Assembly (NCBI RefSeq): GCF_018977255.1
Contig: NW_024704742.1
Span: 137,516,001 to 137,580,000, forward strand
Direction of reading: 5' to 3'
DNA length: 64,000 nt
From: Callorhinchus milii
Lineage: Eukaryota
Part shown: in pieces, positions 312 to 35,400 of the stretch
Position numbering within the stretch: the first letter of the stretch is position 1
How the letters are laid out: each line of letters begins with the position of its first letter
The notes under the pieces: generated by a model
Database searches by the model: none
Told to the model about the DNA's origin: nothing
Seen by the model: the letters and a program-made list of their open reading frames with translations, nothing else
Translations under genes and position numbers: made by a program

Positions 312-2271
312 CACAGACATCATCAACCTGTCCCTTCTCACAGACATCATCAACCTGTCCCTCTCCTCTGGCTCTGCTCCCATTCCCCTAAAAACTGCCA
401 CCATCACTTCCACTTTGAAAAAACCCTCCCTTGATGTGTCGCAGCTATCAAGCTACCGGCCCATCTCCAACCTCCCCTTCCTGGCCAAGGTCCTGGAACG
501 AGTTGTCGCCTCCCATCTGCGCTCTTTCCTCTCCAACCATTCACTATTCAAACCCCTTCAGTCGGGTTTCCGTGCTGCCCATAGCACAGAAACTGCCCTG
601 GTCAAGGTCACCAATGACATCCTGACCATCTGCGATCAGGGCTCCATCTGCCTCCTCGTCCTCCTCGACCTATCGCCTGCAGTTGATACGGTCGACCACG
701 ATATCCTCCTCCACCGCTTGTCCTCACACCTCAACCTTCAAGGCCCTGTCCTTGAGTGGAGTCCTACAGCTCAGTGGTTAGAGCACTCGCTTTGCAAGCG
801 AGAGACCTGAGTTCAATTCCAGGCAGAGGGCGAAACCTTGGGCAAGTTTCCTTACTCCACACAGAGCCTAATAATAATCCCTCCAAAACCTACGACTGTT
901 TGTGGGACATTGTTGTGCGCAATTGGCTGCCGCATTCGCCCACAAATATAGTCAATTCACTTTACAGTGTGTTCTGTGAAGCGCTTTGGGATGTCCTCCC
1001 GACGTGAAAAGCGCTATATCAAATGCAAGGATTATTATTATTATTATTATTATTATTACCTCTCCCACCGTCTACATTTTGTTTCCACACACGGTTTTTC
1101 CTCCGGCCCCCGCACTGTCTCGTGCGGTGTCCCTCAGGGCTCTGTCCTCGGTCCCCTCCTCTTCACCCTCTATATGCTCCCCCTGTGGTGACATCATCCG
1201 CAGACATGGGGTTCACTTCCACATGTATGCAGATGACACCCAACTCTACCTTTCCTCCTCTACCCTCAACTCCACGACCCCCGATGTCCTGACAGCTGTC
1301 TGTCCGACATCGAGTCCTGGATGAGAGACAACTTTCTTCAGCTCAACGTGCGCAAAACGGAGGACCTCCTGATTGGCTCACGTCAGCGCCTCCGCACCTC
1401 AGGCGCCGACACCATCAGCATCCAAGGCCACACTCTCCACCTCTCAAAGCCGGTCAGGAACCTCGGGGTTCTGTTCGACCCTGAGCTGTCCTTTCTCCCT
1501 CATATCCGCGCCACAACTGGCACTGCCTTCCATCACCTCCGGAATATCGCCAGACTACGGCACTACCTCACCCCTCACGCTGCTGAAACTCTGGTCCACA
1601 CCTTTATCAGCTCAAGGCCGGACTATGGGAACTCTCTCCTCGCCGGCCTTCCCGCCACCTCCCTCCACACTGCAGGTCATTCAGAACTCTGCAGCTCGTG
1701 TACTGTCCCGCACCAGACACCGCGCCCACATCACTCCCACCCTCGCTCGCCTCCACTGGCTCCCCATCCCCCAGAGGATCGAATTCAAGATCCTCATCCT
1801 CACCTACAAGGCCATTCACGGCCGCGCTCCCTCCTACCTCTCCAACCTACTATCCCCCTACTTATCTGCCCGTACCCTCTGTTCCTCTGGCTCCGGTCTG
1901 CTCCACATCCCCCGCCCCAACCGCCCTACTATCGGTGGCCTTCAGCCTCTCAGCCCCGAGGCTCTGGAACTCCATCCCCCAGTGCCTTCGCCGCCTCCTC
2001 CCTTTCCTCCTTCAAGGCCGGTCTCAAGACCTTTCTCTTTGACCGCGCCTTCAGCTCCCCTCTCGACTCTCTACCCCCTCCTCGCTCCCTCCCTTCCCTC
2101 CCCTCACCCTGACCATTTCACCCCTCCTCGCCTCCTCCCTTCCCTCCCCTCACCCTGACCATTTCCCCCCAATGCTCGGGTCCTGACCCAACTGTCCAGC
2201 GCCTTGGGACGTCCTCCTGACGTGAAAGGCGCTCTATAAATGAAATCTTGTTCTTGTTGTTGTTGTTGTTG
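312..2271 (+). mobile_element. L2-clade LINE, 5'-truncated (RT through 3' tail), interrupted by a SINE at 758-1058
   Basis: [54 protein letters not shown] across frameshifted ORFs; (TTG)n tail. Confidence 0.93.
758..1058 (+). mobile_element. Young tRNA-head CORE-type SINE with L2-like 3' end and (ATT)n tail
   Basis: A-box/B-box head, ACCTTGGGCAAGTT core motif; near-identical to the other listed copies. Confidence 0.9.
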
Positions 2272-8200: not shown

Positions 8201-10061
8201 CCCAGAGCTTTGGGGTGCAGTGGTTGAAAGCGCGACCTCCGATGGTGGGGCGCAGGGTGCGAGGGACGAGCAGGAGCCGGCGCCAGTCGAGCGGAGGTGC
8301 CGGGTGTTGGACTGGGGAGTGAGGAGGTCGGAGAGGGAGGGAGGTGTCAGAGAGTGAAGGGATTTGAACACGAGAGTGAGGATCTTGAAGTCGATCCGTT
8401 CGGTGATGGGGAGCCAGTGGAGCCTGGGCCAGAACTGGTGAGATGTGGGGACGGAGTTTGGTTGGGGTCGGTCAGTATGTGGGCGGCAGGGTTCTGAATG
8501 AGCTGGATCTTGTGAAGAGTGGAGCTGGGGAGACCGGTGAGGAGTGCACTGGAGTAATCCAAGCTCCCTCCCTTTCTTCCCATCACCCTGACCGTTTCCC
8601 CCCTGCTCGGGTCCTGACCCAACTGTCCAGCGCCTTGGGACGTCCTCCCGACGTGAAAGGCGCTCTATAAATGGAATCTTGTTGTTGTTGTTGTTGTTGA
8701 GGTGACAACTAGTCTGCTTCAGGACTTCACGCTTGCGAGGCGAGGGCGCTAACCACTTCACTACGGGACTCTACAGGACAATGTGGCGAATCGTTGGCCT
8801 GGACACCAGGAGAAACTCCCATCTCGTTTCTTGTCAGCGCAGCAGGATCTTCAAGGTCCTCCTGAACATCCAATGTTACATCCAAATGACGGTGTCTCTG
8901 GCACTGTGCTGGAGCATCAGTCTGGAATGTGAGCTCAAAGTCCCCGACGTGGAATGCCTCCTGCTATCTTTGACCAATAATCTTCCTGATCCATCAGTTG
9001 TTCACCTTGTGGCTGTGTACGGAAAGTTGCTGTGTGCAAAAAGGCTACTGAGCTCACCTCCCGCCCGCTCAAATACCCAGTCAGTACTCGAGACAGTAAA
9101 TCTGCTTTGAGATGTGTGGATGTGGCAGTCACTGAATGAACTGAGTCCTTGCTTTGTCTTAATCCAGGATATCTCTAGTCCAAACCTGCGATGATTGTTG
9201 GTGACTCAATGAAATGTTTCGCTTGTGATCAGAAGGCAATTGTTATGTGTCAGTCTGGGGCGCAGTCAGTTGCGTTCTCATCTCTGAGTTACAAGTTTGC
9301 GGGTTCAAACCCCCACTTTAGGGACTTTGAGCTGACAGTTGAGCCTGACGCTCCAGCGCAGGGTACATCTAGGCTTGACTACGCCAACTCTCGTGGGCTT
9401 GTGGGCCTCCCCAACTCTCCCCTCCACAAGCTGCATATCATTCATTAACCCTGCAGCTTGGGTCCTCTCCTGCACCAATGCTCCGTGACCCTATGATTCC
9501 CAATCCTTGCCCGACTCCACTGGCTCCGCATTCCCCAGAGGATAGCGTTCAAAATCCTTGTCCTCCCTTTCAAGGCCCTCCAAAGCCTTGGTCCTCCCTG
9601 CCTCTGTGACCTGTTATCCCCTTAACAATCTGTCTCCACTCGGCAGACTCTGGCCTGCTCCATGTTCCCCGCTCAATCTGCCCCACAATCGGCGGTCGGG
9701 CCTTCAGAATCTTTGCCCTCACCTTCAGAGCTCCATCCCACATTCCCTTTGCCTTGCTCCCTTCCTTGCCTCCTTTAAGGCACATCTCAAGTCCCTCCTC
9801 TTTGACTGGGCCTTCAGTTACCCTCCTACCCCTACCCTCATTACACCTCCGTGCCTCCTGATCCACACCCCCAGTTCGGATCCAAATCTCTGGCTGTCTC
9901 TGCCTTGGGACATCCCGCCAACTGAAAGCCGCTTACTAATCTAATTTGTTGTTGTTGTTGGGTGCAAGAGCTCCGCATTGTCAGAGACATCGTCATTAAA
10001 CTGAGCTCCTGTCTGTGCCTGTTCGGATGGATGTTAAATGTTCCTGCAGCGCTTTTTGAAA

Positions 10062-10347
10062 AGAGTTCAATTCCAGGCAGAGGGCGAAACCTTGGGCAAG
10101 TTTCCTTACTCCACACAGAGCCTAACAATAATCCCTCCAAAACAATACAATAATAATAAATTGGTCAATTTCAATCCACGACTGTTTGTGGGACGGTGTT
10201 ATGCGCAATTGGCTGCCGCGTTCGCCCACAAATATACGGTCAATTCACTTTACAGTCTATTCTGTGAAGCGCTTTGAAATGTCTAGAAGACGTGGAAAGC
10301 GCTATATCAAATGCAAGGATTATTATTATTATTATTATTATTATTAT
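10062..10347 (+). mobile_element. Young SINE, head-truncated, inserted in an old Deu-SINE
   Basis: Same family as 758-1058; the host Deu-SINE resumes at 10348. Confidence 0.88.
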
Positions 10348-10826
10348 AGAAGGGAGTTTCTCTCTCCTGGTGTTCTGGTCTGCAATCACCCAGATAAAAT
10401 TGGTCACTCACTTCACGCTTGTTTGTGGGAAGTTTCCCTCAGTTCAGGGGCATCTTAACTGCAGGGTGTGGGAGGATGACAGCAAGTTCCAGCAAGTTGT
10501 TAAACAAAGTTGTTGGGAGTTTATACGGTTCATTTCCAACAAGGAAGTTGGCATTTTTGTGCTATTTATCACATGAGTGAGTTCCTCTTCAGGAATCTCA
10601 CTCGGGTCCTCTGGCTTGTGAGGCAAATGCTCTAACCACTGCGCTACTTAGAAGGGGTGTGGGGTGGCGGAGAGCAGACCACGAGTGGAGTGGGGTGATA
10701 ATTAGAAAACTAAATGGATGCTTTATAGTACTTTTATGCAAAAGGAAATCCGGCAGTTTATCCTGTGTGAACTAGGTCCGTTATTTCAGCCTTTTGTGGT
10801 GCTAACGTCCCTCTTTGCATTTACAG

Positions 10827-10927
10827 AGCACGGACCTGACCAGCACCAGCGGCTATGATAGCCTTATCCAGCGCATGAATGATGGGAGGAAGAGCTGTAA
10901 AGAGCTGGAAGAATTTATGAAGCAAAG
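10827..10927 (+). CDS. PSTPIP2: PSTPIP2 exon [34 protein letters not shown]
   Basis: ttacag| ... |gtaccc, 101 nt. Confidence 0.93.
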
Positions 10928-13900
10928 GTACCCGTGGCCGAGCCCTCAGTCTCTAGTGGCATCCTGTAGCTTAGTGGTTAGGATGACCGAAGTCCCGGTC
11001 AAAGAGGAAGGTCTTGAGAAGGGCTTTAAAGGAAAGAGGGGAGGGGGTGAGGTGGAGGGGTTCTGGGTTGGAGTTCCCAAGGGTATGGGCAAAAAGGCTG
11101 AAGGCCCGACTGCTCTAAATTATTAATCTGGGTTTATTTTTCAATCCCATTTAAAATGTCAAGCATCCCTAGGAGATCCCCACTGAGTCGTCTTCTCTCA
11201 AGACTGAAGAGCCTGAGCTTGTTTAATCGTTGCTCACACCTCGCTCCTCTAAGACTGGGGGATCAGCCTCGTTGCTCTCCTCCGCAGTCTCTGCGATCTG
11301 GGCAGCCCCTTTATTTCACGGTGGCCATAATTATTTTAGCATTCAAGGTGTGGCCTCACCGGCCCGACGTGCAGCCTGAGTATGTTGTCTGAGATCTAAG
11401 CTTAACTGCTTGGTTTGGATACTCTTAAACATGGTGATGGGTTCTCACGTGTCAGACTTGTGAGAGCAAAAAAAAAACCCAGCTGATTTAGTAATAAAAC
11501 ACAACATCCTGTTTGCCTTGTTTGTTGCTGCCTCATATTATTTAAACGTAATGAACCAACACCCCTCAGTCTCTGTCTGACTGCTTCCTGCTTGGCAAGT
11601 TCACTCTCAGCGCTTGTGATTTCTATTCTCACTTCCTTGTAACTTGCATTGATCTGTATTGAACTTTATTTGCCAGTTATCTCTCTGCAAAGCTCTCCAG
11701 TAGGACCTTTGCTACTTTCTCTGATTCTACAGTTGCCCCCAAATCAGTGTCATCTCTGAATGCAAGTATTATTATTATTATTATTAATGCAACTATCTTA
11801 CATTGTGTCTGCGAATCCAGGTCATAATAAATAATAATAATCCATGAGACGTCTCAAAGCGCTTCACAGAATATCCTGTAAAGTGAATCGACTGTGTAGT
11901 TGTGGGCGAAATTGATGTATACGTGTATATCCCCCGCGCCCCCTCCCCCCGTTACTCAGTGTCCGTGCCGTACCTCGTGAATCACTTGCTTGCTTCCCCG
12001 CACTTCCCCCAACCCCCCCACCACCCCCCCCCGTATGATTCTCAATGGAGGAACGAAAGGATTGGAAGATAATAATAATAATCCTTGCAATTGACGTAGC
12101 AACTTATCACATTGATGAGACGTCTTAAAGAGCTTAACAGAATACACCGTGAAGTGGATTGACTGTTTATCGTGTGGGAGAAACACATAGGGTTTGTGTA
12201 AAGTGGTATCGCAGGTGGAGACGTTAAACCGAGGTCGGGTCTGTGCCTGTTCAGGAGGACGTTAAAGATCCCGCAACACTGCTTGAAAAGAGAAGGGAGT
12301 CTCTCTCTCCCCGTGTCCTGGCTGACAATACCCCAAATAAAATTGGTCACTCACCTCGTGGCTGTTTGCGGGAACATTGCTGTGCGTAACTTCGCTGCCA
12401 CTTTTGCCTACAAATACACAGTCACTACACATGACACTGCTCTGCGCGTCGATGTCTATAGCAGCATATCGAGGGATATGGAGCAAAGGCAGGTAAATGG
12501 AGTTCAGGTACAGATCAGCCCTGATGTAATAGAATGGTGGAATGGTTAATTATTATTGCATTGACTTTAAAAGAAAGGAAGTGGCGGTGAATTGATATAA
12601 ATCTGTGGTCGGCCACAAATGGAAAATAAGGGAAGTTTTGGTGCCAAAATACGGACGGGGTATCAAGGTGCTATCGTGATAAATAATAATAATAATAATA
12701 ATAATCTTTGCATTTGATATAGCGCATTTCACGTCGGGAGGACGTCCCAAAGCGCTTCACAGAACACACTGTAAAGTGAATTGACTGTACATTTGTGGAC
12801 GAACGCGGCAGCCAATTGCGCACAGCAATGTCCCACAAACAGTCGTAGATTAAAAATGACCAATTTATTATTGTTTTTGGTTTTGGAGGATTATTATTAG
12901 GCTCTGTGTGGAGTAAGGAAACTTGCCCAAGGTTTCGCCCTCTGCCTGGAATTGAACTCAGGTCTCTCACTTGCAAAGCGAGTGCTCTAACCACTGAGCT
13001 ACAGGACTCCATGTACACAAACACTTATAAAAATATTTTTGAGATACAAAATATTATCCAGAAGGCTAACCACATAAATGTTGGTTACCCATCTCAAGGA
13101 GCAACTGATATATATTATAAAACAGCGGCAATGATTTGGATACAACAGATCACATTGTGGAACGACTTTCAGGTCCGGAGGACGTCACAGACTCGGTGGA
13201 ATCAGCTTCACGGAGCTGGCCTGCACAGCCAACTTTCCACCTGCTGTGTCTGAGTCGCATTGTCCATGCTCCTGGACAGGGGTACTTATTGACTCCTTGT
13301 TGAACCTGGAAACATTATCTGAATAAATCTTGGCAATCTTGCTCAATACCAGTACCACGAACAATATCAGGAACATGACAGGCACCAACACTATCACAAG
13401 AACATGTTGATTCTGTGAGCAAACTGTGTCTGATTTGTTGGTTCCAGGCGAAATAAAGAGGACCCAGCAGAAATTGACGGGTACTGGAGCAGAAAGGGGA
13501 GGAAAGGGGAAAGGGTTTAGAGGGAACGGGGAAAGAGTATTGAATTAGGAATAAGATGGACCGCTTCTTGGAAGAGCAAATACAGACACAAAGTAATGGA
13601 GCCAAAGGCCGCCTAAGGTGTCCTACATTTCTACAATTCGTTGTTTTTACATTATATCTTGATATTTTTGGTCGGCCGGGTGTCTGACAGGTGCGGAAAC
13701 CCATCACCGTTGCATAAGAACAAGTCAAACTTGAGAATTCCCTGCATCCCACCTACACATGGAAATCCCGGAGATAGATTGTTGGAATGGAATACGCCTT
13801 GGAGCTCTCTCTCTCTCTCGCTCGCCTTGGAAGGATGCATCCTACTTACCTAATCCCGGAGAGTATTAGGCCCTGGTTGGCAAGAGCCAAGGTTTGGGCA

Positions 13901-16900
13901 GCCCAGGGTGTGCGTTGGAGTAATTGCTGGTGTTTAATCAGCTAAACCGCATAGCTTGCCATTGATAGCACAGTCTGACAAGCTTTCCCACTGCTTGTTC
14001 AGCGAGGATCACCAGGGCTTTGGCTGCAGGGTTAACCGGAGCTGAGTGGGAGGATTCCCTGCCCCCAGTGACTGGTCGGCCCTTCCAGATCTTGCTGATG
14101 AGCCAGACTGTATATCTTGACGGTGGATTGTGTGGTGTCCTCAGAAAAGACAGGAAGTTAATGATTACCAATTGGTTAGATTTAGCAGTTAGTAGATCAC
14201 CAGGAAGTTGAGGAAATCGTTGATCCTTTGCTCCGGGGGCTGAAATTCCACCCAGTCTCAGCCAGCGAGATCTTTTCGATCTTTAAAATTCAACACAGGG
14301 CAGAACTGTACAAAAATAATCTCTGCTTTATTGCTAAGGCTCCATTTCCAGAGTTGTTAGAAAACAGCACCTTCCTCAACTTTGCCTTCCTCATTTTCAG
14401 CTCCAAATGTCTCACGGCCTGTCAGATCCCCGCCCCCAGTGACCTCAACAACAACAACAACAACAAGATTACATTTGTATAGCGCCTTTCACGTCGGGAG
14501 GACGTCCCAAGGCGCTGGATCTCCTGCCTGCTGCTCCCTCGTCCGTTCCATCCCAATGTCAGTGGGAGCTTTTCGCCACTTTGCTACCTTCCACTGCTTC
14601 TCTTCCATACCTCCGCCGATCGACTAACGACCGGGTTCCTACTTACTGCTCGGTAAACAGAGGCGTGTGGAGTAAGGAAACTTACCTAAGTTTTTGCCCC
14701 CCCCCCCCCGGGAATCGCTAGTTGATTGGCGGATCGCTTTTCCAGGGGTAATAATTCCTCCAAAAGATAAAGACGTGATAAGGCGCTACATCAAATGCAA
14801 AGGTTATTATTAGTAAAACATGTCTCCTAACCACTTGCATTGTTACTTTGGTGATTTGTGCCCTCTGATTACCGACCAGTGGAAATAATTCCTCCCAATT
14901 TACACCATCATCATCAACCCCTTTATATCCTTCTCCCTCTTATAGAGGGGGTCTGTGAGGGGGGGGGGGAGAGGAATATAAACACCACCGTGGACCAGAG
15001 GGGTCTGTTTCTGTGCTGTAACATTCCATGAATTTGTATCGGGTTAAAACTCTCCATCAGGTCTCCTCGTGACCTCTCCAGTCTCTCCTCCGAGATTACA
15101 CCTCTCAGCTCTGGTATTGTGTGGAGATATAATCGGGGAGGGGGGGAGTGGGGGTAGGGAGTTGGTGTTTGTGAGCTTCTTGGCGAGGAACGTCAGTCAC
15201 GGGTTTCAATGACGGAGTTTGTTAATCCGCTTGCAGTAACTTCAAAGGAGTTTTTTATGTATGAGTATTTACTTATACAGCAGTTTTTCGAGTTCAAAAT
15301 CCTTGTCCTCACCTATGACGCCCTCCACGGCCTTACTCCTCCGCACCTGTGACCTGCTAACATCATACTGACCTGTCCGCCACCTCCTCTCACCGAGCTC
15401 CGAGCTGCTTCACATCCCCCGCCTTGCCCACCCATCCTTCAACGCCCATCTCAAGACCTTCCTGGCGGGGGCGGTAGGCGTGGTGGGGGTGGGGGGGTGG
15501 GGGGACTGGACACTCTGCCAGCTGTTAGTTACAGATGTGTGTGGGGGGCAGTTAGAGTTACAGATGTGTGTCTCTTGGACCCAGGGCCAGCATTGAGGAG
15601 CGCTACGGGAAGGATTTGGTGTCTCTGTCAAAGAAAGTGTGCGGTCAGAACGAACTCAAGTGAGTTACACCTTCTAATTCATTTCATGGGAATGTTTTTG
15701 TATAGTGTGAGCAGGGCAGTGAGTGTGAGCAGCAGTGAGTGTGAGCAGGGCAGTGAGTGTGAGCAGCAGTGAGTGTGAGCAGGGCAGTGAGTGTGAGCAG
15801 CAGTGAGTGTGAGCAGGGCAGTGAGTGTGAGCAGCAGTGAGTGTGAGCAGGGCAGTGAGTGTGAGCAGCAGTGAGTGTGAGCAGGGTAGTGAGCGTGAGC
15901 AGCAGCAAGTATGACAGGGAAGGTGACGGAGACAATGAGGAGTCAGTGTTTGTGTGTGAGGNNNNNNNNNNNNNNNNNNNNNNNNNNNNNNNNNNNNNNN
16001 NNNNNNNNNNNNNNNNNNNNNNNNNNNNNNNNNNNNNNNNNNNNNNNNNNNNNNNNNNNNNNNNNNNNNNNNNNNNNNNNNNNNNNNNNNNNNCGCGTTG
16101 AAGCTGGAAAACCACTCAGAAGTCAGAAGTGAGGTACAGGCGGTGGGCGCTCATTCACTCTCCCTCACTCACACTCTGTCTCTCACTCTCTTTCTCACTC
16201 CAACTCGCGCTATCGCTCTCATTTGCTCTTCTGTCCAAAATCTTATTCTCTCACTCTCTCGCTCACTCGCTCGCTTGCTCTTGTTCACTCACTCTCAGTC
16301 TCTCTCTCTCTCTCTCGTTCTCGCTCACTCTCTCGTTTACTCTCTCTCGCTCTCCTTTTCTCTCTCCCTTTCACTCACTCACTCACTCACTCACTCACTC
16401 AGTCACTCACTCAGTCACTCACTCAGTCACTCACTCACTCACTCGCTCTCTCGCTCACTCTCCTGCTCGTGTTTTTCAGTACACTGAAGAGAGCGTTTGA
16501 TGTCTTTAAACAACGTAAGTATCAGTTGATCATTTGCTTTGAGTGTGAGGAACCTCTCATTGCTTTGCTCAGCGCTTTGATACAGGGTTTCCCCCTGACG
16601 CTGACCGTGCCCCTGGGAAGGAAACACTTTTTTCTGCTCCTAACTTCCTACTGTGAGACCGTTGAAATGTCAGCCATTAATTTTCTGCCTATTTTGTGAC
16701 TGGCTTATACAGTGGTCTGTGCCCTGGGCCTGTGAGTGCCTGACCAGCTCCTGATCAAACCCCGCCACATCCTAGCCCTCGCCCTTTCCTCCCGCTATCT
16801 CCTGCAGGTCCTGCCCCCGTCTGCTCCCTCCTCTGATCTGCTGCTCCTAACTCCTCCTTCCGTCCCTCATGCCATGAACCCGCTCTGCCTTCCCCCACCT

Positions 16901-19900
16901 CCACACCATCGCCCGACTCCACCACTGCCTCTGCCCTCAGGCCGTCGAGACCCTTATTCTCACATTCATCACATCGAGACTCAACCACACCACCTCTCTG
17001 CTTGTCGGCCTCCCCAACGCTTCCCTCCACAAGCTGCAGATCATCCAGAACTCTGCAGCTCGTGTCCTCTCCCGCACCAGGCTCCGTGACTCCATCTCCC
17101 CCATCCTCACCCAGTTCCATTGGTTTCTCATCCCCCCAGAGGATAGAGTTCAAAATCCTCGTTCTCGCTTCAAACGGCCTCACTCCTCCCTCTGCGACCT
17201 GCTAAACCTTTACTAAACCTGTCCACTCCCTCCGCTCAGCAAGCTCCAGCCTGCTCCATGTCCCTCACCCTGCCCGCTCCACCAGTGGCGGTCTGGCCTT
17301 CACCCCCACACTCTGTGTTAGCATGGTAACCTTCTGCTTGGATGCTTCCTGGTGTTGACCCTCGTCCCCCTTGGACCTGTGCCCTGGGCCGATCAGCGAA
17401 GATTATTCTGTGCTTACTTGTGGGGAAAGGCCAGACAATACATTTTAAGTTTATATAGTAGCTTTTGTGTTGGGAGAATGAGTCAGGATGAGATTGGGCA
17501 CTCATTCACACTCTCTCTCTCTCTCTCTCACTCCAACTTTCATTCTGTTGCTCTCTCACTCTTTTGCCTCACTCGTACTCTCGCTCACTCTCTCTCTCAC
17601 TCTCTCTTAAACTGGGATGAGCTGGGATCAGAAACTCTGCGAAAACCTTCCTCTTCGACTGCGGTTTCGGTCACCCTCCTACCCCCACCCACCCTGCCCT
17701 CCACCCCTCCTAATCCCAACCCCCAGCTCGGGTCCAACTCCCTGATTATTCTGCACCTTGGGACGTTCTCCTGACGTGAAAGGCGCTGTGTAAATGTAAT
17801 GTGTTGTTATTTAATGAACTGTTTGGAGCAGCTCTGTGGCCGATGGTCTCTCTCCCTCTCTCTCTCTCTCTGTAACGTTGTGATGGTTCTGCTCTGTTTC
17901 TTCAGAGATTGAGAACGTGGGATTGTCCCACATACAGCTGGCCAGCAACCTGCGGGAAGAGGTGAAGAAACTGGAAGATTTCCGGGAAAAACAGAAGGAT
18001 GCACGGAAGAAAGTGTGTGAGCTGTGATCGACCCCTCCCTCCCTTGCCATCTTTCTCTCTCACTCTGCTCCGCTTAAAGATCACTCCCTCCCAGTCTGCC
18101 CGCTCTCTCCACTCCGAGAGCCCTCGTATGACTCCACGTCCATCACACTGCCCACTCCACCATCGGCAGTCAGCCTTCCTCTCCGTAATCCCGGTGTAAA
18201 TGCAATTTGGTGTTGTTGCTGTTGTCTAGCCTGACATTCACGGCTGATGGAATTCGAGGCTCCTCCAGGCCTCAATGTCTGTCACAACATCAAAGGGGAC
18301 GAACGATTTTGTTTCCATCTAAAATGAGGAAGTGCTGGAGTTCAGTAACCGATACAGCTTAGAGGAAGAATGCCTCTGCTGACATTGAACCCAGACAGAG
18401 ACATAACACTAGCTGCCCTGTTTAGCCAAGTCTTGAGCCCGCTGGTATCATCATGATGTCCTGTAGCTCAGTGGTTAGAGCACTCACCTCACAAGTGAGA
18501 GGACCCTGGTTCGATTCCCGGGCGAAGCAAAAACCTTAGGCAAGTTTCCTGACTCCACACACCACTGTTTACCCATCAGTTAGTAGGAACCCGGGCTTTA
18601 GTTGAGTGCGAATCTCTATAATCCCTTCAAAAACAAAATTAATAATTTGGTCACTCAATCCACGACTGTTTGTGGGACACTACTCTATGCAATTGGCTGC
18701 CGCGTTTCGCCCACAAAATATACAGTCGATTCACTTTACAGTATATTCTCTGAAGCGCTTTGAGACGTCTCGAAGACGTGATAAGGCGCTATATCAATGC
18801 AAGGATTATTATTATTATCATAGCCTCAGTCGCTCACACTCACACTCTCTCGTCACAGGTGGAACATGTGATGGAGAATCTTCACAAACAGAAGTCAGCT
18901 TTTTACAAGAAAACCATGGACGTGAGTCTGCCTTTCACTGCCACCGTTTAGCTTTCAGCTACTACGCCCCCAAAATCTGGAACACTCTTCCTCTATCTCC
19001 CCGCCTTTCCCCTTCCCTCCCCATCTTCGGGTCGCACCTGAAGACCTTCCTCATCAACCGTGCCTACGGCCCCCACGTAACCTTCTCTGCTCTAATGGGA
19101 AAAGTCCTAACTTCTCCACTGTCCTCATAGCTAAGTTTCCCCATTCCTGGTATCATTCTCGTGAATCTCCTCTGCACCCTTTCCAGTGCCTTAATGTCCT
19201 TCCTGATGTAAGGTGCCCAGAACTGGACGCAGTACTCCAGCTGAGGCCTAACCAGTGTTTTGTATAGATTAACCATAAACTCCCTACTCTTATACTCTAT
19301 GCCCCTACTAATAAATGTCTACATTGATGTCTTGATGATGTGAAAAGGTCATGAAATGCAAAGATGATTGTTATACAGTAAAACTCGCATAAGTCTTATC
19401 TTTATAAATCATTTAATTGCATATGTCTATATGTGGAATCCTGCACTTCAGTGGTTAGAGCGCTCGCCTCTCAAGTGAGACACCTGGATTCGATTCCCGT
19501 TAGGGTAAAATTTTGAGCAATTTTCCTTACTCCACACGCCTCTGCGTACCTAGCAGTAAGTAGGAACCCGGTTGTTAGTCGATTGGTGGATTGCTTTTCC
19601 GGGTGTAGTAATCCCCTCAAAAAAATAAATCGGTCACTTCAATCCACGACTGTTTGTGGGACGCTGCAGTACGTAATTGGCTGCTGCGTTTCGCCCACAA
19701 AATATAGTGCCCATTCACTTTACAGTCTGTTCTGGAAGCGCTTTGAGACGTCACAAAGACGTGATAAGGTGCTATACCAAATGTTAGGATTATTATATTT
19801 ATTCGCCCGAGTCCCATTTAGTTTCCTATTTCTCTACACAGCTCATATTAATCGCCTTCGTATCACCGCTCCCCTACCCTCCATTCCTCCCGCACTTACC

Positions 19901-22900
19901 AGCAGCATTGAATTACAGTGAAGATTATTGATTAAATCGGAGTTTGTCTGTAACTCGGACTTCACCTAAGTCATATTAAATGTTATGGACCCTAATACAA
20001 CAAGATACAACAACAAGATTCCATTTATAGAGCGCCTTTCATGTCGGGAGGACGTCCCAAGGCGCTGCCTAATAACGACTTATGTGAGTTTTACTATTCA
20101 TTACTATTCAAACGCAACTTGTTGTACGAGTTAACACTAAGCATTGTGGTCATTCACCGCAGTCCAAGAAGACGTACGAACAGAAATGTAAAGACAAGGA
20201 TGAGGCTGAGCAGCAGATGAACAGAAACACTGGATTAACCAACGTTAAACAGATAGAGAAGGTAATAGCCACCCCCCAACTTCCATGTGTGTCTAGTTAC
20301 TGATCACTAACCTCTGTGTGTGACTAGTAACTGATCACTAACCTCTGTGAATTTCTGTTCCAGCTCCAAGCCAAAGCTCACCAGAGTAAGCAAGTGGCAG
20401 ATGAGGCTGGTGAGTGCGTGTGTGGGGGTTCTGGGTGGAGAGGAGGGTTGGGGGTTCTGGGGGTCGAAGTGGTGGGAAGGGGGTGGCGATACACACTGGG
20501 AGGGTGGGGCTGTGGGAGGTGGGGAGGAGGTGTTGGGTGCAGATCTGGGGGAGGGGGTCCTGGGTGAGGGGCAGCGGGGGGGCTAGGGCTGGGTTTGGTA
20601 GGGGTGGGAAGGGGTTGGTGGTACACCGGGGGGTGGGGGGGAGGGGGGAGGCAAGGACTAACATGCTCTGACGTTGTGCTCAGTGACTCCTGGGCCCTTT
20701 AATCCCACTCTGGCCGTGGACAGTCCCATTGAGGGTTTGAATATTAAAATGAGGCTTAAGGTTTCACTCTGCCCAGGAATTGAACCCAGGTCCTCTTGCT
20801 CGCAAGGCGAGTTCTCCAACCACTGAGCTACAGGCCTCCACTCTGTCGCCAGGGTTTGACTTGCTCCCCACTCCCGAGGACTGACTGATGTTTGTTAACT
20901 CTCCCCCCACATCCCCCACCCCCACACAGATCGAGTCTACTATCAGAACGTTTCGAACCTAGAGAAGATCCAGAAGGACTGGGAGACAGAGCACATACGG
21001 ACATGTGAGGTAGGAGCCGCCTATTGCAAACAACAGCGACAACGCGCATTGCACAGTGCCCTTCACGCGGGGCTGCCTCTCGGAGTGCTTAACAGCGGCA
21101 GAGCTTGACACCGAGCCGGGCGGGGGTTGGGGGGGAGAGGGGAGGTGACTGTAAGCTTGGTCAAAGAGGAAGGTCTTCAGATGTGATCTGGAAATGGGTG
21201 CAAGGCGGAAGGATTGAGGGAGAGAGTTCCATGGTTTCGGGACTTAGTGGCTGAAAGCACGGCCACCGATGCTGGAGGGGGTGGTATGAGGGACAAGCAG
21301 GAGGCCATAGCCAGCCGAGCAGAGGCAGCGGGTGGTGGAGTGGGGAGGTAAGAGATACCTGTCACATTTGTGACACATGTATCTGCTCCTTTAACATTAA
21401 AGGTACAATGTGGTTGACACATCCCACAATCAATTATATGCATTAATAAATTAGAAAACAGTCAAGACAGTGTAGAGCTTTACTGTGTCTCTAACCCTGA
21501 CCTGGGAGTGTGGACGCACAGTGTAGAGGAGCTTTACTGTGTCTCTAACCCTGACCTGGGAGTGTGGACGCACAGTGTAGAGGAGCTTTACTGTGTCTCT
21601 AACCCTGACCTGGGAGTGTGGACGCACAGTGTAGAGGAGCTTTACTGTGTCTCTAACCCTGACCTGGGAGTGTGGACGCAAGGTGTAGAGGAGCTCTACT
21701 GTGTCTCTAACCCTGACCTGGGAGTGTGGACGCACAGTGTAGAGAGAGCTTTACTGCGTCTCTAACCCTGACCTGGGAGTGTGGACGCACAGTGTAGAGG
21801 AGCTTTACTGTGTCTCTAACCCTGACCTGGGAGTGTGGACGCAGTGTGGAGGGAGCCGTAGTGGTGCATGCTCAGTCATTCAACGTGAATGTGTTGGATC
21901 TGGTTTAGATGCTGGAACAGCAGGATTGTGAGAGGATCCACGGCCTGAGGAACACCATGTGGGTCCATTCCAACCTGCTGTCACAGGAGTGTGTGGCCAA
22001 TGACGAGGTGAGAGCTCAGCACTATCTCTACACCGGGCACGTGTGGACACTGAGGGGTGGGGAAGGTCCATTTATAGTGTGGAATCATGTAGCGTAGTGG
22101 TTAGAACACTCGCCGCGCAAGCGAGAGGACCTGGGTTCGATTCCCAGGCAGGGTGAAACGCCAGGCAAGTTTCCTTAGTCCACGCGCCTCTGTGGCGAGT
22201 TTCCTTCCTCCCCACCTCGCAGTAAGTAGGAACCCGGTTGTTAATCGATCGCTTTTCCGGGGAGTAATAATCCCTAAAAAAAAAAGTGATTTGGTTACTC
22301 AACCCACGACTGTTTGTGGGACACTGCTGTGTGCAATTGGTTGCCACGTTTAAGCCCACAAAGTACTGAGTCAGTTCACTCGGGAGTATAATCTGTGCAT
22401 CGCTTTGAGAGTCTCAATGAGGTGATAAAGGCACTGTATCAAATGCTAAGATTATTATTATTATTTTGTGCATATTTTATTATTAGTGTCCAAATTAGTG
22501 TGCATTGTGAGACCCAGAGCTTGGTGTCCCCTGGCCTCACATTGTGAGACATTCTGTTCCTCGTCACAGATGAACTCTTTCTCTCTCTTATACACACACA
22601 CACACACAGTCTCACTCTCACACACACACGCACTCACTCTCACACACACTCACTCTCTCTCACACACACTCACTCTCTCACACGTTCTCTCACTCTCTCA
22701 CACACTCACTCTCTCACACGTTCTCTCNNNNNNNNNNNNNNNNNNNNNNNNNNNNNNNNNNNNNNNNNNNNNNNNNNNNNNNNNNNNNNNNNNNNNNNNN
22801 NNNNNNNNNNNNNNNNNNNNNNNNNNNNNNNNNNNNNNNNNNNNNNNNNNNNNNNNNNNNNNNNNNNNNNNNNNNNNNNNNNNNNNNNNNNNNNNNNNNN

Positions 22901-25220
22901 NNNNNNNNNNNNNNNNNNNNNNNNNNNNNNNNNNNNNNNNNNNNNNNNNNNNNNNNNNNNNNNNNNNNNNNNNNNNNNNNNNNNNNNNNNNNNNNNNNNN
23001 NNNNNNNNNNNNNNNNNNNNNNNNNNNNNNNNNNNNNNNNNNNNNNNNNNNNNNNNNNNNNNNNNNNNNNNNNNNTCACGCTCTCTCACACGTTCTCTCA
23101 CGCTCTCTCACACACACACTCACTCTCACTCTCTCTCACACAGTCTCTCTCACACACTCACACACTCACTCTCTCTCACACTCACACTCCCTGGTAATGA
23201 GATGCAACTGAGCACGTGATGTTGGGAAGTGAAAACCTTGCCAGCTTTTGGGCTGAAGATTCTCATCGTTCTTTTTTCCTTAATCCTCCTCATCTTCCTC
23301 AGACGTATGAAGAGATCCGGAAGGTTCTGGAACAGTGCAACATCCAAAAGGACTTGGAATTCTACGTAGACTTGAAGCGAACTGGCGACACACCCCCAGG
23401 TAGCCTCCTTCCCGCCGTCCTGTCAGGGGTGTGGGGGTTGGGGGACGTAATATAATGTGGATCTTCCAATGAATCACACAGGCCCGCTGTGTGCTGCGAG
23501 TCCTGTAGCTCGGCGGTTAGAGCACTCGCCTTGCAAGCGAGGGGACCTGAGTGTTGAGGCTGAAAACATGGCTGCCGATGGTGGAGGGGATGAGGGACAA
23601 GCAGGAGGCCAGAGCCAGTTGAGTGGAGGTGGGGGTGGTGGAGTGGGGAGTAAGCCAGTCTATAAGAGAGGTGTGGAGATGCCAGGGCATGAAGGGACTT
23701 GTAAACGAGTGGATCTTGAAGTCGATCCGTTCTGTGACAGGGAGCCAGTGGAGCCTGGCGAGGACTGGGCTGATGGGGGTGCGGAGTTTAGTGTGGGTGA
23801 GAATCCGGACGGCAGAGTTTAGGAGCAGTTTCGAACACACACACACACTCGAATGAGAGTGATTACTTGGGGTGAGATACTGAGAGTGTTCAGGGCTGGG
23901 CATGGTGTGAAGACGGATTATAACAGAATTTTAGGCATCTGATAAGTGCGTGTGATAGGCTGTGATGCTCTCTCTCCCCCCCCCCCGTCCTCACCAACAG
24001 CAGAATATTAATATAAATACCATTTCTTTCTCAGCTATTATCCCTTATGAGAATTATTACAATGCCCAGAGGGGGCTGAGTGGACCCCGGAATTCCAACA
24101 ACACAAGGTAATGGGGGGAGGGCTGCTCCAGACTGTTTATTACACCCCCCCACCCTCCCCACCCCCTTTATCTGAGCGTGTATTACCTGTGCTCTCACCT
24201 CTGGGTCACCTCCCGCCCCCCCTCACCCAGACTGACATCGGCCACAGCACATTGGTCCACCAATCATGTTGGGAGGAGGCCAAAAGATGGAGCCAAGTTG
24301 GCCAAATCCTGACCTCACCCCCTACACCCAAAGTAACCAATCCTCAGCCCAAACGTCTCCCCAGAGTTGCTGATCTCAGCCTGGTCCCTGGGCGAGGGAG
24401 GGGGCTGACGTTCCAATCAAATGTGTAGATTAATGTTTTGATAATTGGCTCATCGCTTCCTTATGTTACAGACGGAACCCCCTGCCAGTACCGCAGAATG
24501 CATGTGAGTCAGCACACGCCAGCACACGCTAGCACACGTCAGCACATGCCACCACACTCCAGCACATGACACCACACGCCAGCACAAGCCAGCTTGTTCG
24601 CCTGTACACTCTTGGCTTCAGTTGCAAACCCCACTCCGCTCCTTGGGATCTGGATCCCTCCATCCCTGCCTCTTGCTGTCTCCTAGATTGCAATGAGCGC
24701 ACTCGTCCGTTATTTTTGCTCTCTCTGTCGCACCGTCCACCTCCTCCGCTCATTCCCTCCATCCCACCATCGATGGTCGAGCTTTCAGTTACCCCTCCAC
24801 CCTGTGACTGTAGGCACAGCTGAAGAGGAAGCTCCTCAGGCATGATCCGATGATGGGTGAGGAGGGGCAAGAGGCAGAGTTCCAGAGTTTCAAGGCATAG
24901 TGGCTGAAAGAATGGTGGAGCGGAGGGGAAGGGGGACAAGCAGAAGGTCCGAGCCGGCTGAGCAAAGTGGTGGGGGTACGGGGGAGGGGGTGGGGGGCGT
25001 AGTGGTGGTAGAGGAGTGGGATGTGAACTGGAGGCTTGGCCCGAAACAAGGAGAAATGCTCTTTAAGTTGGAGCCGGGCTGCCGGTTTGGGAGATTGTTG
25101 TACAAACGCTAGTCACGCTGTCCTCAGCTCGCTCACTCCCTTTTATTTTGTCTCCTTCCAGATGACGAGTCTCAATATGCAACGATTGGAGACAGCTCCT
25201 ACAGTTTATTGCAGCACTAA
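10827..25220 (+). CDS. PSTPIP2: PSTPIP2 (proline-serine-threonine phosphatase-interacting protein 2), F-BAR protein without SH3; 13 coding exons, 966 nt (321 aa + stop); first exon of about 11 codons not located
   Basis: Hand-spliced exons of 101,75,35,107,63,99,46,80,99,97,73,32,59 nt, all AG/GT and in phase. They give [45 protein letters not shown]...[10 protein letters not shown]...MWVHSN...IIPYENYY...SYSLLQH*, matching the PSTPIP F-BAR family. The short YSLL C-terminus without SH3 indicates PSTPIP2 rather than PSTPIP1. Confidence 0.93.
12682..13011 (-). mobile_element. Young SINE, full length
   Basis: Reverse complement of the 30011-30337 copy. Confidence 0.9.
13185..13448 (-). pseudogene. 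Intronless CD40-like TNF receptor superfamily fragment (end of last CRD, TM, TRAF-binding tail); probable 5'-truncated retrocopy, antisense in a PSTPIP2 intron
   Basis: Open frame [87 protein letters not shown]. GTxxSDxVC is the TNFR CRD terminus; PVQE at 13269-13280 fits the TRAF2-binding consensus. Confidence 0.75.
13670..14090. repeat. Unclassified dispersed repeat family (copies near 3800-4130, 5420-5610, 32060-32210, 40450-40570, 49090-49385, 50540-50670, 52520-52730, 57410-57530, 58430-58770)
   Basis: Shared blocks gaaacccatcac, catcccacctacacatggaaatccc, cagctaaaccacatagcttgcc, ggattccctgccccca; no tRNA head, simple-repeat tail or ORF seen. Confidence 0.75.
15585..15659 (+). CDS. PSTPIP2: PSTPIP2 exon [25 protein letters not shown]
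   Basis: cccag| ... |gtgagt, 75 nt. Confidence 0.93.
15705..15903. repeat. 34-bp dimeric (18+16) minisatellite, about 6 copies
   Basis: gcagggcagtgagtgtga + gcagcagtgagtgtga starting 15711, 15745, 15779, 15813, 15847, 15881. Confidence 0.95.
15962..16093. other. Assembly gap (132 N)
   Basis: N run. Confidence 1.
16145..16465. repeat. CT/TCAC low-complexity microsatellite
   Basis: (tcac)n and (ct)n runs. Confidence 0.9.
16480..16514 (+). CDS. PSTPIP2: PSTPIP2 exon [11 protein letters not shown]
   Basis: ttttcag| ... |gtaagt, 35 nt. Confidence 0.92.
17906..18012 (+). CDS. PSTPIP2: PSTPIP2 exon [36 protein letters not shown]
   Basis: ttcttcag| ... |gtgtgt, 107 nt. Confidence 0.93.
18859..18921 (+). 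CDS. PSTPIP2: PSTPIP2 exon [21 protein letters not shown]
   Basis: tcacag| ... |gtgagt, 63 nt. Confidence 0.93.
19376..20096. mobile_element. Tc1/pogo (Tigger-like) non-autonomous element with nested SINE and L2 tail
   Basis: TA|CAGTAAAACTCGCATAAGTC (19376-19395) and GACTTATGTGAGTTTTACTA (20077-20096) are 18/20 inverted repeats. Confidence 0.6.
19445..19800 (+). mobile_element. Older SINE subfamily with complete CORE domain (other copies near 2700-3003 -, 18460-18815 +, 22078-22460 +, 50838-50985 +, 61870-62200 -)
   Basis: ...ttactccacacgcctctgcgtacctagcagtaagtaggaacc..., a segment deleted in the young subfamily. Confidence 0.82.
20163..20261 (+). CDS. PSTPIP2: PSTPIP2 exon [33 protein letters not shown]
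   Basis: ccgcag| ... |gtaata, 99 nt. Confidence 0.93.
20364..20409 (+). CDS. PSTPIP2: PSTPIP2 exon [15 protein letters not shown]
   Basis: ttccag| ... |gtgagt, 46 nt. Confidence 0.92.
20930..21009 (+). CDS. PSTPIP2: PSTPIP2 exon [27 protein letters not shown]
   Basis: cacacag| ... |gtagga, 80 nt. Confidence 0.93.
21468..21845. repeat. 54-bp minisatellite, about 7 copies
   Basis: tactgtgtctctaaccctgacctgggagtgtggacgcacagtgtagaggagctt with period 54. Confidence 0.95.
21909..22007 (+). CDS. PSTPIP2: PSTPIP2 exon [33 protein letters not shown]
   Basis: gtttag| ... |gtgaga, 99 nt; retains the conserved Trp of the WxHxN motif. Confidence 0.93.
22585..23185. repeat. CA/CT microsatellite spanning an assembly gap
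   Basis: Repeat on both sides of the N run. Confidence 0.9.
22728..23075. other. Assembly gap (348 N)
   Basis: N run. Confidence 1.
23303..23399 (+). CDS. PSTPIP2: PSTPIP2 exon [32 protein letters not shown]
   Basis: ttcctcag| ... |gtagcc, 97 nt. Confidence 0.93.
24035..24107 (+). CDS. PSTPIP2: PSTPIP2 exon [25 protein letters not shown]
   Basis: ttctcag| ... |gtaatg, 73 nt; PYENYY motif. Confidence 0.9.
24472..24503 (+). CDS. PSTPIP2: PSTPIP2 exon [10 protein letters not shown]
   Basis: gttacag| ... |gtgagt, 32 nt; similar to the human RGPLPIP segment (recalled). Confidence 0.85.
24510..24595. repeat. 10-bp minisatellite (agcacacgcc-like), about 8-9 copies
   Basis: Directly after the donor at 24504. 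Confidence 0.85.
25162..25220 (+). CDS. PSTPIP2: PSTPIP2 last coding exon [19 protein letters not shown]
   Basis: ccttccag| ... TAA at 25218-25220; a gtaagt donor follows at 25226. Confidence 0.88.
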
Positions 25221-35200: not shown

Positions 35201-35400
35201 TCCACCTGAGACTCCAGCTCAGCTACTCTAAGCTGGAGCTTCCTCAGTTGCAGACATTTGCTGCAGATGAAGTGACCTGTGCTCAGGGCACCCTCCATCA
35301 ACTCCCACATACCACATTCCTCACACTTCACCTGCCAGGTCATTCTCTCCTCTCACTTTATTTATCCCTGTATTATTGTTGTTTAGAAGATATACTTCCC
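32213..35400 (-). mobile_element. CR1 LINE with ORF1 (Cys zinc finger, leucine zipper, SGNH-esterase-like) and decayed ORF2 (APE + RT); 3' end missing
   Basis: ORF1 starts ATG at 35343 (CEECGMW..CSKCLQLRKLQLRVAELE, VVIGDE, HIGIND). APE motifs LYLNARS, ITETW, VYRPP, GDFN. RT motifs YRPVSLTSVVGK, LDFKKAFDKVPH, KFADDTKL. Confidence 0.93.

What the first reader, a model, noticed from the sequence alone, without database searches (positions are those of the whole stretch)
13185..13448. Hidden intronless CD40-like TNF-receptor fragment antisense inside a PSTPIP2 intron
Seen: an uninterrupted minus-strand frame [40 protein letters not shown]...TPVQEHGQC...GGKLAVQ...*, followed by about 170 nt of AT-rich UTR-like sequence down to the SINE at 13011. 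Established (recalled): human CD40 reads AGTNKTDVVC...[27 protein letters not shown]...APVQET, with introns between the CRD, TM and tail; PxQE is the TRAF2/3 site. Inference: a 5'-truncated retrocopy of a CD40-like TNFRSF mRNA whose frame is still open. If expressed it would give an ectodomain-less TRAF-binding membrane peptide or an antisense regulator. No other CRD exons were found in the window.
Basis: partly seen in the sequence, partly recalled or inferred. Interest (0 to 1): 0.75.

Follow-up and report, generated by a model that had tools for sequence, protein, structure and literature searches.

The report
SINE-tailed retrocopy of a TNF-receptor mRNA
A young, 5'-truncated, intron-free copy of the last four exons of an elephant-shark CD40/HVEM-like TNF-receptor gene lies backwards in a PSTPIP2 intron; it is most likely a dead pseudogene, but it ends in a SINE's (ATT)n tail and not in poly(A).

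Summary
The minus-strand ORF (13185-13454) matches one protein among 1.84 billion representatives. That protein is a 264-aa Callorhinchus milii TNF-receptor superfamily member, named TNFRSF14 or TNFRSF5-like by different sources (E 2.4e-40, 88% identity, residues 173-264).

I fetched the parent gene. It has at least 9 exons. Window 13454-12693 is collinear with its last four exons, and three GT..AG introns (578, 735 and 148 nt) are exactly absent. Homology starts 13 nt inside the transmembrane exon. No cysteine-rich-domain exon occurs anywhere in the window. This is therefore a 5'-truncated processed retrocopy, antisense in an intron of C. milii PSTPIP2.

Two points are new:
- The "SINE at 13011" is part of the copy. 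The parent carries the same CmiSINE at the same position in its 3' UTR region.
- The copy ends exactly at that SINE's (ATT)n tail, which has 8 units against 4 in the parent. There is no poly(A). I infer that reverse transcription was primed on the SINE tail by the SINE's L2-type partner LINE.

The frame is probably open because the copy is young. One thing is unexplained: 9 of 159 sites differ in the transmembrane part, against 0 of 288 in the rest of the non-SINE sequence. Function is unproven.

The parts
12682..13454 (-). Whole retrocopy: spliced 3' part of a TNFRSF (CD40/HVEM-like) mRNA, its 3' UTR, an embedded CmiSINE and an (ATT)8 tail
   Evidence: Collinear blastn and pairwise alignment to the spliced parent exons in L001. 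There is no collinear homology beyond either end.
13319..13454 (-). Copy of the parent's transmembrane exon (end of CRD4, TM helix, juxtamembrane region), lacking the first 13 nt of that exon. This is the 5' truncation point.
   Evidence: Matches L001 13119-13259 with 7 substitutions and 5 gapped columns over 141 alignment columns. The parent exon starts at 13106 after ...CCATAG.
13296..13318 (-). Copy of the parent's 26-nt mini-exon (..DNVSRFNK), joined without an intron
   Evidence: Matches L001 13838-13863, which is flanked by TTTCAG| and |GTAATT in the parent. Differences are TT>AA and one AAG fewer, as in the cDNA-derived protein P0001.
13241..13295 (-). Copy of the parent's penultimate coding exon, carrying the P-V-Q-E TRAF-type motif (TPVQEH)
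   Evidence: Matches L001 14599-14653 at 55/55 identical. The parent has GACAG| and |GTGAGT at its borders.
13185..13240 (-). Coding part of the parent's last exon plus the stop codon (13185-13187)
   Evidence: Matches L001 14802-14857 at 100% identity.
13012..13184 (-). Unique 3' UTR sequence of the parent
   Evidence: 100% identical to L001 about 14858-15034.
12706..13011 (-). CmiSINE (tRNA-Ala head, CORE body, L2-type 3' domain), co-retroposed from the parent's 3' UTR region in the sense orientation
   Evidence: Same junction with the unique UTR as in the parent; 6 differences in 314 nt. tRNA-Ala(tgc) head at 12937-13007. More than 20 family copies in the window. Family described in PMC5499810.
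12682..12705 (-). (ATT)8 microsatellite tail, the 3' end of the retrocopy; no poly(A)
   Evidence: The parent has (ATT)4 at L001 15337-15348. The sequences diverge completely right after the tail: TATCACG... in the window, AACTTGA... in the parent. Other family copies end in (ATT)3-9.
13484..13535 (-). Host-intron sequence just upstream of the copy: a long polypyrimidine tract ending in CAG (AG ends at 13484), and an open frame back to 13541. Possible cryptic 3' splice site; not part of the retrocopy.
   Evidence: Read directly from the sequence. No similarity to the parent's intron. Use as a splice site is untested.
10812..10928 (+). PSTPIP2 exon upstream of the host intron
   Evidence: tblastn with C. 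milii PSTPIP2 (P0009). FCH domain found in the spliced model.
15583..15657 (+). PSTPIP2 exon downstream of the host intron
   Evidence: tblastn with P0009, 100% identity.

Best explanation
The element at 12682-13454 (minus strand) is a young, 5'-truncated processed retrocopy of a multi-exon Callorhinchus milii TNF-receptor superfamily gene of the CD40/HVEM-like group. It is inserted antisense in an intron of PSTPIP2.

Shown: the template was a spliced Pol II transcript, because three parental introns are exactly removed. That transcript ran through a CmiSINE lying in sense orientation in the parent's 3' UTR region. The copy ends exactly at the SINE's own (ATT)n tail, which has 8 units against 4 in the parent. 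It has no poly(A).

Inferred: reverse transcription was primed on the SINE's 3' domain and tail by the SINE's partner LINE. The literature names L2-2_CM, an L2-clade element; L2-clade LINEs such as UnaL2 are of the 'stringent' type that recognises a specific 3' end, with slippage on the tail repeats. Reverse transcription then continued 5'-wards through the UTR and the spliced exons. It stopped, or the cDNA was joined to the target, 13 nt inside the transmembrane exon. The host mRNA was in effect carried along upstream of a SINE, a 5'-transduction-like event.

Also inferred: the product has no signal peptide, no ligand-binding CRDs, no promoter of its own and no usable start codon. It is most likely a non-functional pseudogene fragment whose frame is open because it is young.
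For: Homology:
- One hit in 1.84e9 representatives, E 2.4e-40, 88% identity to residues 173-264 of a 264-aa C. milii TNFRSF protein.
- Pfam TNFR_c6 in the parent. PDB matches to ELR1, CD40, OPG and HVEM.

Processed origin:
- The parent locus L001 has at least 9 coding exons.
- Window 13454-12693 aligns collinearly to L001 13119-13259, 13838-13863, 14599-14653 and 14802-15349. The intervening GT..AG introns are absent.
- Homology starts mid-exon. The upstream window sequence is unrelated to the parent's intron.
- There are no CRD exons in the 64-kb window.

SINE-tail 3' end:
- A 550-nt block, 98.9% identical, spans the stop codon, the unique UTR and the whole SINE with the same UTR/SINE junction. 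It ends in the ATT repeat.
- The tail is (ATT)8 in the window and (ATT)4 in the parent. The flanks are unrelated immediately afterwards, and no A-run is present.
- More than 20 copies of this SINE family in the window all end in (ATT)3-9 followed by unique DNA.
- The family has a tRNA-Ala head. It is described as sharing its 3' tail with the L2-2_CM LINE (PMC5499810).
- L2-clade UnaL2 ends in repeats that are thought to be involved in template slippage (PMC3747384).
- No collinear homology resumes beyond either end.

Youth:
- 0/288 differences in the tail-coding and unique UTR sequence, and 6/314 in the SINE.

No evidence of a gene product:
- No predicted protein of 54-171 aa matching it exists in the 5.8e9-protein collection.
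- The only in-frame ATG (13376) lies inside the TM segment.
Against: - No target-site duplication could be defined. The best candidate is a 5-6-nt AT-rich match that overlaps the tail. Other family copies also lack clear duplications.
- No empty site was available for comparison.
- The parent's real mRNA 3' end is unknown. AATAAA signals lie inside the SINE (L001 15173) and 136 nt past it (15485). Priming may therefore have been internal to the RNA, which is not the textbook case for L2-type elements.
- The predicted 3' hairpin of the SINE tail is not significantly more stable than shuffled controls (z = -1.5).
- Divergence is strongly uneven: 9/159 substitutions plus in-frame-compatible indels in the TM and mini-exon part, against 0/288 in the rest (p = 8e-5). 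Simple neutral decay of one young copy does not predict this. The source may have been another allele or an unassembled paralog, or selection may have acted.
- Expression was not testable here.
Confidence: 0.8

Rival explanations
1. Ordinary poly(A)-primed (L1-type) processed pseudogene. The SINE merely happens to lie in the 3' UTR, and the poly(A) tail has been lost.
For: Processed pseudogenes are classically made by L1 on poly(A) tails (PMC3747384). The parent has an AATAAA 136 nt beyond the SINE.
Against: The copy stops exactly at the SINE's canonical 3' end and has none of the 136+ nt that would precede a downstream poly(A) site. No A-run follows the tail, even though the 3' part is about 99% identical to the parent. 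The ATT repeat is doubled, as expected from slippage during tail-primed initiation.
Confidence: 0.1
2. Expressed, functional retrogene or exonised fragment. Spliced in through the strong acceptor at 13484, or translated from an internal start, it would give an ectodomain-less membrane peptide with a PVQE TRAF-binding tail that acts as a decoy or dominant-negative. Alternatively it could act as an antisense RNA regulating PSTPIP2.
For: The frame is intact over 89 codons despite 9 substitutions and 2-3 indels, and all the indels preserve the frame relative to the cDNA-type parent. The TM stays fully hydrophobic. The PVQE motif is unchanged. A long polypyrimidine tract plus CAG lies 30 nt upstream, with the frame open across it.
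Against: There is no upstream ATG in frame, no signal peptide and no promoter evidence. The single in-frame ATG sits in the middle of the TM helix. The tail-coding part has zero differences from the parent, so its intactness says nothing about selection. No matching predicted protein is in public collections. Eight of the 9 substitutions are nonsynonymous.
Confidence: 0.06
3. Last exon of a genuine nested TNFRSF gene, or a DNA-level (segmental) duplicate of the parent's 3' end.
For: A splice-acceptor-like sequence lies just upstream. TNFRSF genes do duplicate.
Against: Three parental introns are precisely missing, which DNA duplication cannot produce. Homology begins 13 nt inside the exon, and the upstream sequence is unrelated to the parent's intron. 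No CRD exons occur in about 50 kb upstream on that strand.
Confidence: 0.02
4. Chance hydrophobic ORF with a fortuitous resemblance to CD40.
For: Pfam and PDB searches with the fragment alone found no TNFR hit.
Against: E 2.4e-40 to a TNFRSF protein, and 98.9-100% nucleotide identity to its exons and UTR.
Confidence: 0

Closest known systems
Processed pseudogenes / retrocopies (LINE-mediated retroposition of spliced mRNA)
   Same: Introns are precisely removed. The copy is 5'-truncated, lacks the parent's promoter, and is inserted at an unlinked locus inside another gene's intron.
   Different: It has no poly(A) tail. The 3' end is the microsatellite tail of a SINE embedded in the parent's 3' UTR region. 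This points to a stringent-type (L2-clade) LINE and not to an L1-like, poly(A)-recognising one. Target-site duplications could not be seen.
SVA 5' transduction / exon trapping in hominids (e.g. the MAST2-SVA_F1 subfamily; PMC4859970)
   Same: Host-gene exons, already spliced, are carried upstream of a non-autonomous retroelement. They are retrotransposed with it because the LINE machinery engages the element's 3' end.
   Different: There the element is SVA and the machinery is L1 acting on poly(A). Here the element is a tRNA-derived CORE-SINE with an L2-type tail in a chimaera. It is a single dead-end copy, not a propagating subfamily.
CmiSINE (SINE2-1_CM / SINE2B-1_CM) with L2-2_CM as partner LINE (PMC5499810)
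   Same: tRNA-Ala head, a 3' domain shared with L2-2_CM, an (ATT)n end, and very high copy number in C. milii. At least 20 copies lie in this window.
   Different: A normal copy starts at the tRNA-like head, being a Pol III transcript. This copy is extended 5'-wards by 443 nt of spliced TNFRSF mRNA, so its template was a Pol II transcript.
CD40 (TNFRSF5) and HVEM (TNFRSF14)
   Same: The parent has four CRDs, one TM helix and a short tail with a P-x-Q-E TRAF2/3-type motif. PDB profile hits to CD40 reach 2e-26.
   Different: Orthology is unresolved. ELR1 scores better (1.3e-30) and sources disagree on the name. The window copy keeps only the last 12 or so residues of CRD4, so it cannot bind ligand.

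Membership tests
Processed retrocopy (retropseudogene) | An intron-containing parent gene exists elsewhere in the genome | tested here: met
   L001 (C. milii MU249857.1) carries the gene with at least 9 coding exons.
Processed retrocopy (retropseudogene) | Parental introns are precisely absent at the exon-exon junctions | tested here: met
   Three GT..AG introns (L001 13260-13837, 13864-14598, 14654-14801) are missing. The junctions are exact.
Processed retrocopy (retropseudogene) | 3' poly(A) tract at the end of the copy | tested here: not met
   The copy ends in (ATT)8 of the embedded SINE, with no A-run. This bears on the mechanism (not L1-type), not on the RNA-mediated origin.
Processed retrocopy (retropseudogene) | Flanking target-site duplications | tested here: inconclusive
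   Only a 5-6-nt AT-rich match overlapping the tail was found. Other SINE copies of the family also lack clear duplications.
Processed retrocopy (retropseudogene) | Empty (pre-insertion) site in an allele or related species | not testable with these tools
   No eukaryotic genome collection can be searched by DNA here. The joined flanks have no second copy in the window or in L001.
TNF receptor superfamily (for the window fragment itself) | At least one complete cysteine-rich domain (Pfam TNFR_c6) | tested here: not met
   Pfam finds no TNFR_c6 in the fragment. Only the last Cys-containing stretch of CRD4 is present. The parent has TNFR_c6 at 5.7e-20.
TNF receptor superfamily (for the window fragment itself) | Significant sequence homology to a bona fide family member | tested here: met
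   E 2.4e-40, 88% identity to P0001 residues 173-264.
CD40 (TNFRSF5) orthologue (for the parent gene) | CD40 is the best reciprocal match, with conserved synteny | tested here: inconclusive
   PDB ranking is ELR1 > CD40 > OPG = HVEM. Sources give mixed names. The neighbours in L001 are a nuclear receptor, a PRY/SPRY gene, a PYRIN/Death gene and an integrin alpha, and were not compared with the CD40 neighbourhood.
TRAF-binding receptor tail | A (P/S/A/T)-x-(Q/E)-E motif in a cytoplasmic tail that binds TRAF2/3 | not testable with these tools
   The motif TPVQEH is present and identical in parent and copy. Binding is an experimental property. The consensus is cited from established knowledge.
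LINE-partnered SINE-type retroposition (stringent 3'-end recognition) | The insert ends at the canonical 3' domain and microsatellite tail shared by the SINE and its LINE, with a variable repeat number | tested here: met
   The end coincides with the family's (ATT)n terminus, 8 units against 4 in the source. The tail-LINE relation is taken from PMC5499810 and was not re-derived here.
LINE-partnered SINE-type retroposition (stringent 3'-end recognition) | The partner LINE's reverse transcriptase demonstrably mobilises RNAs carrying this tail | not testable with these tools
   This needs a retrotransposition assay. The predicted tail hairpin is not statistically distinctive.

The most novel reading that the evidence does not exclude
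The copy is not dead. The strong acceptor at 13484 exonises it into a minus-strand transcript, and it is translated into an ectodomain-less transmembrane peptide with an intact PVQE tail that titrates TRAFs. On this reading, the excess of frame-preserving, hydrophobicity-preserving changes confined to the TM segment reflects selection after insertion. More broadly, a SINE in a 3' UTR would be a general route by which L2-dominated, L1-poor vertebrate genomes make retrogenes.
Probability: 0.05. Interest if true: 0.75.

Novelty: new variant of a known kind. Interest (0 to 1): 0.42.

Why it matters
As a gene fragment it is ordinary, one more processed pseudogene. Its interest lies in how it was made. 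Genomes dominated by CR1- or L2-type LINEs are thought to make few retrocopies, because those LINEs need their own 3' end and do not use poly(A). This case has clean boundaries and about 99% identity to its source. A spliced mRNA was copied from the tail of a SINE sitting in its 3' UTR region. If the route is general, SINEs in 3' UTRs would decide which genes can be retroduplicated in such genomes, and that can be tested genome-wide. The copy is also a caution for annotation. It carries an intact TM-plus-TRAF-motif ORF that could be mis-called as a small TNFRSF gene.

Tried and rejected
- Pfam and PDB searches with the fragment alone gave no TNFR hit. The only Pfam match was TMEM192 at 0.0035, below its cutoff, and the only PDB match was succinate receptor at E~9. 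The fragment is too short and mostly TM, so these searches were uninformative.
- Regex and Cys-density scans for CRD-like exons on the minus strand found nothing convincing.
- A word-indexed search of 5.8e9 proteins with the parent found no close paralog, only a 30% identical Polypterus TNFRSF3-like protein. The same search with the fragment found nothing. The paralog or allele explanation for the diverged TM segment therefore could not be tested.
- The search for target-site duplications and for an empty-site proxy, using the joined flanks against the window and L001, was negative or ambiguous.
- Folding of the SINE 3' domain gave a hairpin, but z = -1.5 is not distinctive.
- I checked for an editing signature in the TM-region substitutions. 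The types are mixed (C>A, C>T twice, G>C, T>G, G>T, A>C, TT>AA), so this is not APOBEC- or ADAR-like (read).
- DNA-level duplication, a nested gene and a chance ORF were considered and rejected (see rival explanations).
Full report
OBSERVATION. On the minus strand an open frame runs from 13541 to a stop at 13185-13187. From 13454 it reads [89 protein letters not shown]. About 173 nt of unique sequence follow the stop. Then comes a tRNA-like SINE head (Rfam tRNA 12942-13004; ARAGORN tRNA-Ala(tgc) 12937-13007).

SETTING AND SPECIES. A rough spliced model of them contains an FCH/F-BAR domain. Its best database match is C. milii PSTPIP2, with the next best hits (skates and sharks) at about 75% identity. 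tblastn with that C. milii protein gives 95-100% identity for most exons, from 10812-10928 through 15583-15657 to 25161-25217. The window is therefore the C. milii PSTPIP2 locus, or that of an extremely close relative. The ORF lies antisense in the intron between 10928 and 15583. The window also carries more than 20 copies of a SINE with a tRNA-Ala head and an (ATT)n end. This matches the holocephalan-specific CmiSINEs described in PMC5499810.

IS IT A TNFRSF SEQUENCE? The fragment alone finds nothing in Pfam or the PDB. phmmer against 1.84 billion representative proteins finds exactly one hit, P0001 (264 aa), at E 2.4e-40 and 88% identity, covering its residues 173-264. P0001 is UniRef V9L7C2, 'TNFRSF14', from C. 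milii. Its 90% cluster also holds RefSeq models named 'TNFRSF5 isoform X1', 'TNFRSF5-like' and 'TNFRSF14 isoform X2'. It has a signal peptide, CRDs (Pfam TNFR_c6, 5.7e-20), a TM helix and a short tail containing PVQE. Its ectodomain matches ELR1 (1.3e-30), CD40 (2e-26), and OPG and HVEM (1.2e-22) in the PDB. 'CD40-like' is reasonable, but orthology is unresolved.

RETROCOPY TEST. The parent locus was fetched as L001: GCA_018977255.1, MU249857.1, with the gene at 10001-14892. tblastn shows at least 9 coding exons. blastn and pairwise alignment of the window's minus strand to L001 give four collinear blocks that are contiguous in the window:

- 13454-13319 matches L001 13119-13259, the TM exon.
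- 13318-13296 matches 13838-13863, a 26-nt exon.
- 13295-13241 matches 14599-14653.
- 13240-12693 matches 14802-15349, the last exon, the 3' UTR and the SINE.

In the parent these blocks are separated by introns with canonical borders: CAG|GTGAGG...TTTCAG|, AAG|GTAATT...GACAG| and CAG|GTGAGT...TTTTAG|. All three introns are exactly absent from the window. The parent's TM exon begins at 13106, after CCATAG. Homology begins at 13119, and the window sequence upstream of 13454 is unrelated to the parent's intron. With the true parent as query there is no CRD exon anywhere in the 64-kb window. No collinear homology resumes beyond either end. These results establish a 5'-truncated processed retrocopy. 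They exclude DNA-level duplication and a chance ORF, and leave a nested gene very unlikely.

THE 3' END. The last block is 550 nt at 98.9% identity. It runs from the last coding exon through 173 nt of unique UTR (100% identical), across the same UTR/SINE junction and through the whole SINE. It stops in the ATT repeat. The parent has (ATT)4 followed by AACTTGAATCC. The window has (ATT)8 (12682-12705) followed by TATCACGATAG. No A-run is present. Every other copy of this SINE family in the window ends the same way, with 3-9 ATT units followed by unique DNA. The retrocopy therefore ends at the SINE's own canonical terminus. The SINE was not a later insertion and is not the boundary of the feature. 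It is the 3' part of the retroposed unit.

According to PMC5499810, CmiSINEs share their 3' tail with the L2-2_CM LINE. L2-clade LINEs such as UnaL2 are of the 'stringent' type that recognises its own 3' end. They carry tail repeats thought to be involved in template slippage (PMC3747384). My inference is that the L2-type machinery engaged the SINE tail inside a spliced Pol II transcript of the TNFRSF gene and reverse-transcribed back into the mRNA. The doubled repeat fits slippage. This step is inferred, not shown. The closest described analogy is the retrotransposition of chimeric SVA transcripts containing upstream exons (PMC4859970).

Caveats are as follows. No target-site duplication could be defined. 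The parent's true poly(A) site is unknown, with AATAAA both inside the SINE and 136 nt beyond it, so priming may have been internal. The predicted tail hairpin is not statistically distinctive.

AGE AND CODING STATE. Differences from the parent are very unevenly spread:

- TM exon part: 7 substitutions and two indels in 141 columns.
- 26-nt exon: 2 substitutions and one AAG fewer. The cDNA-derived P0001 also reads NKES, so the missing AAG may be allelic or a splice variant.
- Remaining coding sequence and unique UTR: 0 of 288 sites.
- SINE: 6 of 314 sites.

The 5' part against the unique 3' part gives Fisher p = 8e-5. The tail-coding frame is therefore open because it is essentially unmutated, which says nothing about selection. 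The TM changes are nearly all nonsynonymous but hydrophobic-for-hydrophobic. The indels keep the frame relative to the cDNA-type parent. Neutral decay of a copy that is about 1% diverged does not predict this pattern. The likeliest explanation is that the template came from a different allele or an unassembled paralog. Three independent sources (the cDNA, the older assembly and the newer assembly) all agree on the parent-type TM. No paralog protein was found. This remains unexplained.

For function, the copy lacks a signal peptide, CRDs and a promoter. The only in-frame ATG (13376) is in the middle of the TM helix. A long polypyrimidine tract ending in CAG (AG at 13484) lies 30 nt upstream with the frame open across it. 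Exonisation into an antisense transcript is conceivable but untested.

VERDICT. The added points are the true extent (12682-13454), the identified parent, the SINE-tail 3' end and its mechanistic implication, and the unexplained TM-region divergence. As a locus it is most likely a young dead retrocopy. As an example of SINE-tail-primed retroposition of a spliced host mRNA in an L2-dominated genome it is a modestly interesting variant of a known process.

Noticed in passing
L001 13225-13240 (parent gene, newer C. milii assembly): The newer assembly reads TGG-AGAAAGAG where the cDNA-derived protein and the older-assembly models read W-Q-K-E (TGG CAG AAA GAG). This 1-nt difference frameshifts the cytoplasmic tail and produces RefSeq 'isoform X1' ending ...[23 protein letters not shown], which has no PVQE motif. 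It is either an assembly error or a natural null or tail-less allele.
   Followed up: partly
window 49753-50298, 51781-52260, 55506-56138 (+): Two V-set Ig exons and an Ig-plus-TM exon lie downstream of PSTPIP2. The second V-set exon's best PDB match is Siglec-15 (E 1.4e-9). From memory, SIGLEC15 lies near PSTPIP2 on human 18q21, so this looks like conserved synteny, possibly with a duplicated V-set exon or gene.
   Followed up: partly
window 13150-13260 (-): An alternative frame of the retrocopy encodes [36 protein letters not shown]. This is identical to the frameshifted C-terminus of the parent's TM-exon-skipping isoform X2 (P0002, P0005), presumably a soluble form. It shows that the parent undergoes exon-skipping alternative splicing.
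   Followed up: no
window, e.g. 2192-2245, 8623-8676, 14469-14516, 43100-43153, 63598-63651: A second repeat family shares the roughly 55-nt 3' domain (GGGACGTCCTCCCGACGTGAAAGGCGCT...) with the CmiSINE but ends in (GTT)n and not (ATT)n. This is consistent with the shared-tail SacSINE1-CM / L2 relationship described in PMC5499810.
   Followed up: no
window 32656-33541 (-), 34690-35343 (-), 19067-19252 (-), 1126-2158 (+): ORF fragments that look like non-LTR (CR1/L2-like) retrotransposons, with motifs such as KSFYKYIKRKR and [13 protein letters not shown]. Pfam gave no hit for the two tested.
   Followed up: partly
window 15677-16150 and 22468-23211, flanking the two N runs (15962-16093, 22728-23075); L001 15900-16400: Low-complexity CA/CT-rich tandem arrays (translated as ...SHSLT..., and CACACAAACACCCCCCACCA-type units in L001) border the masked or gap stretches. 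The N runs were not filled or looked up.
   Followed up: no
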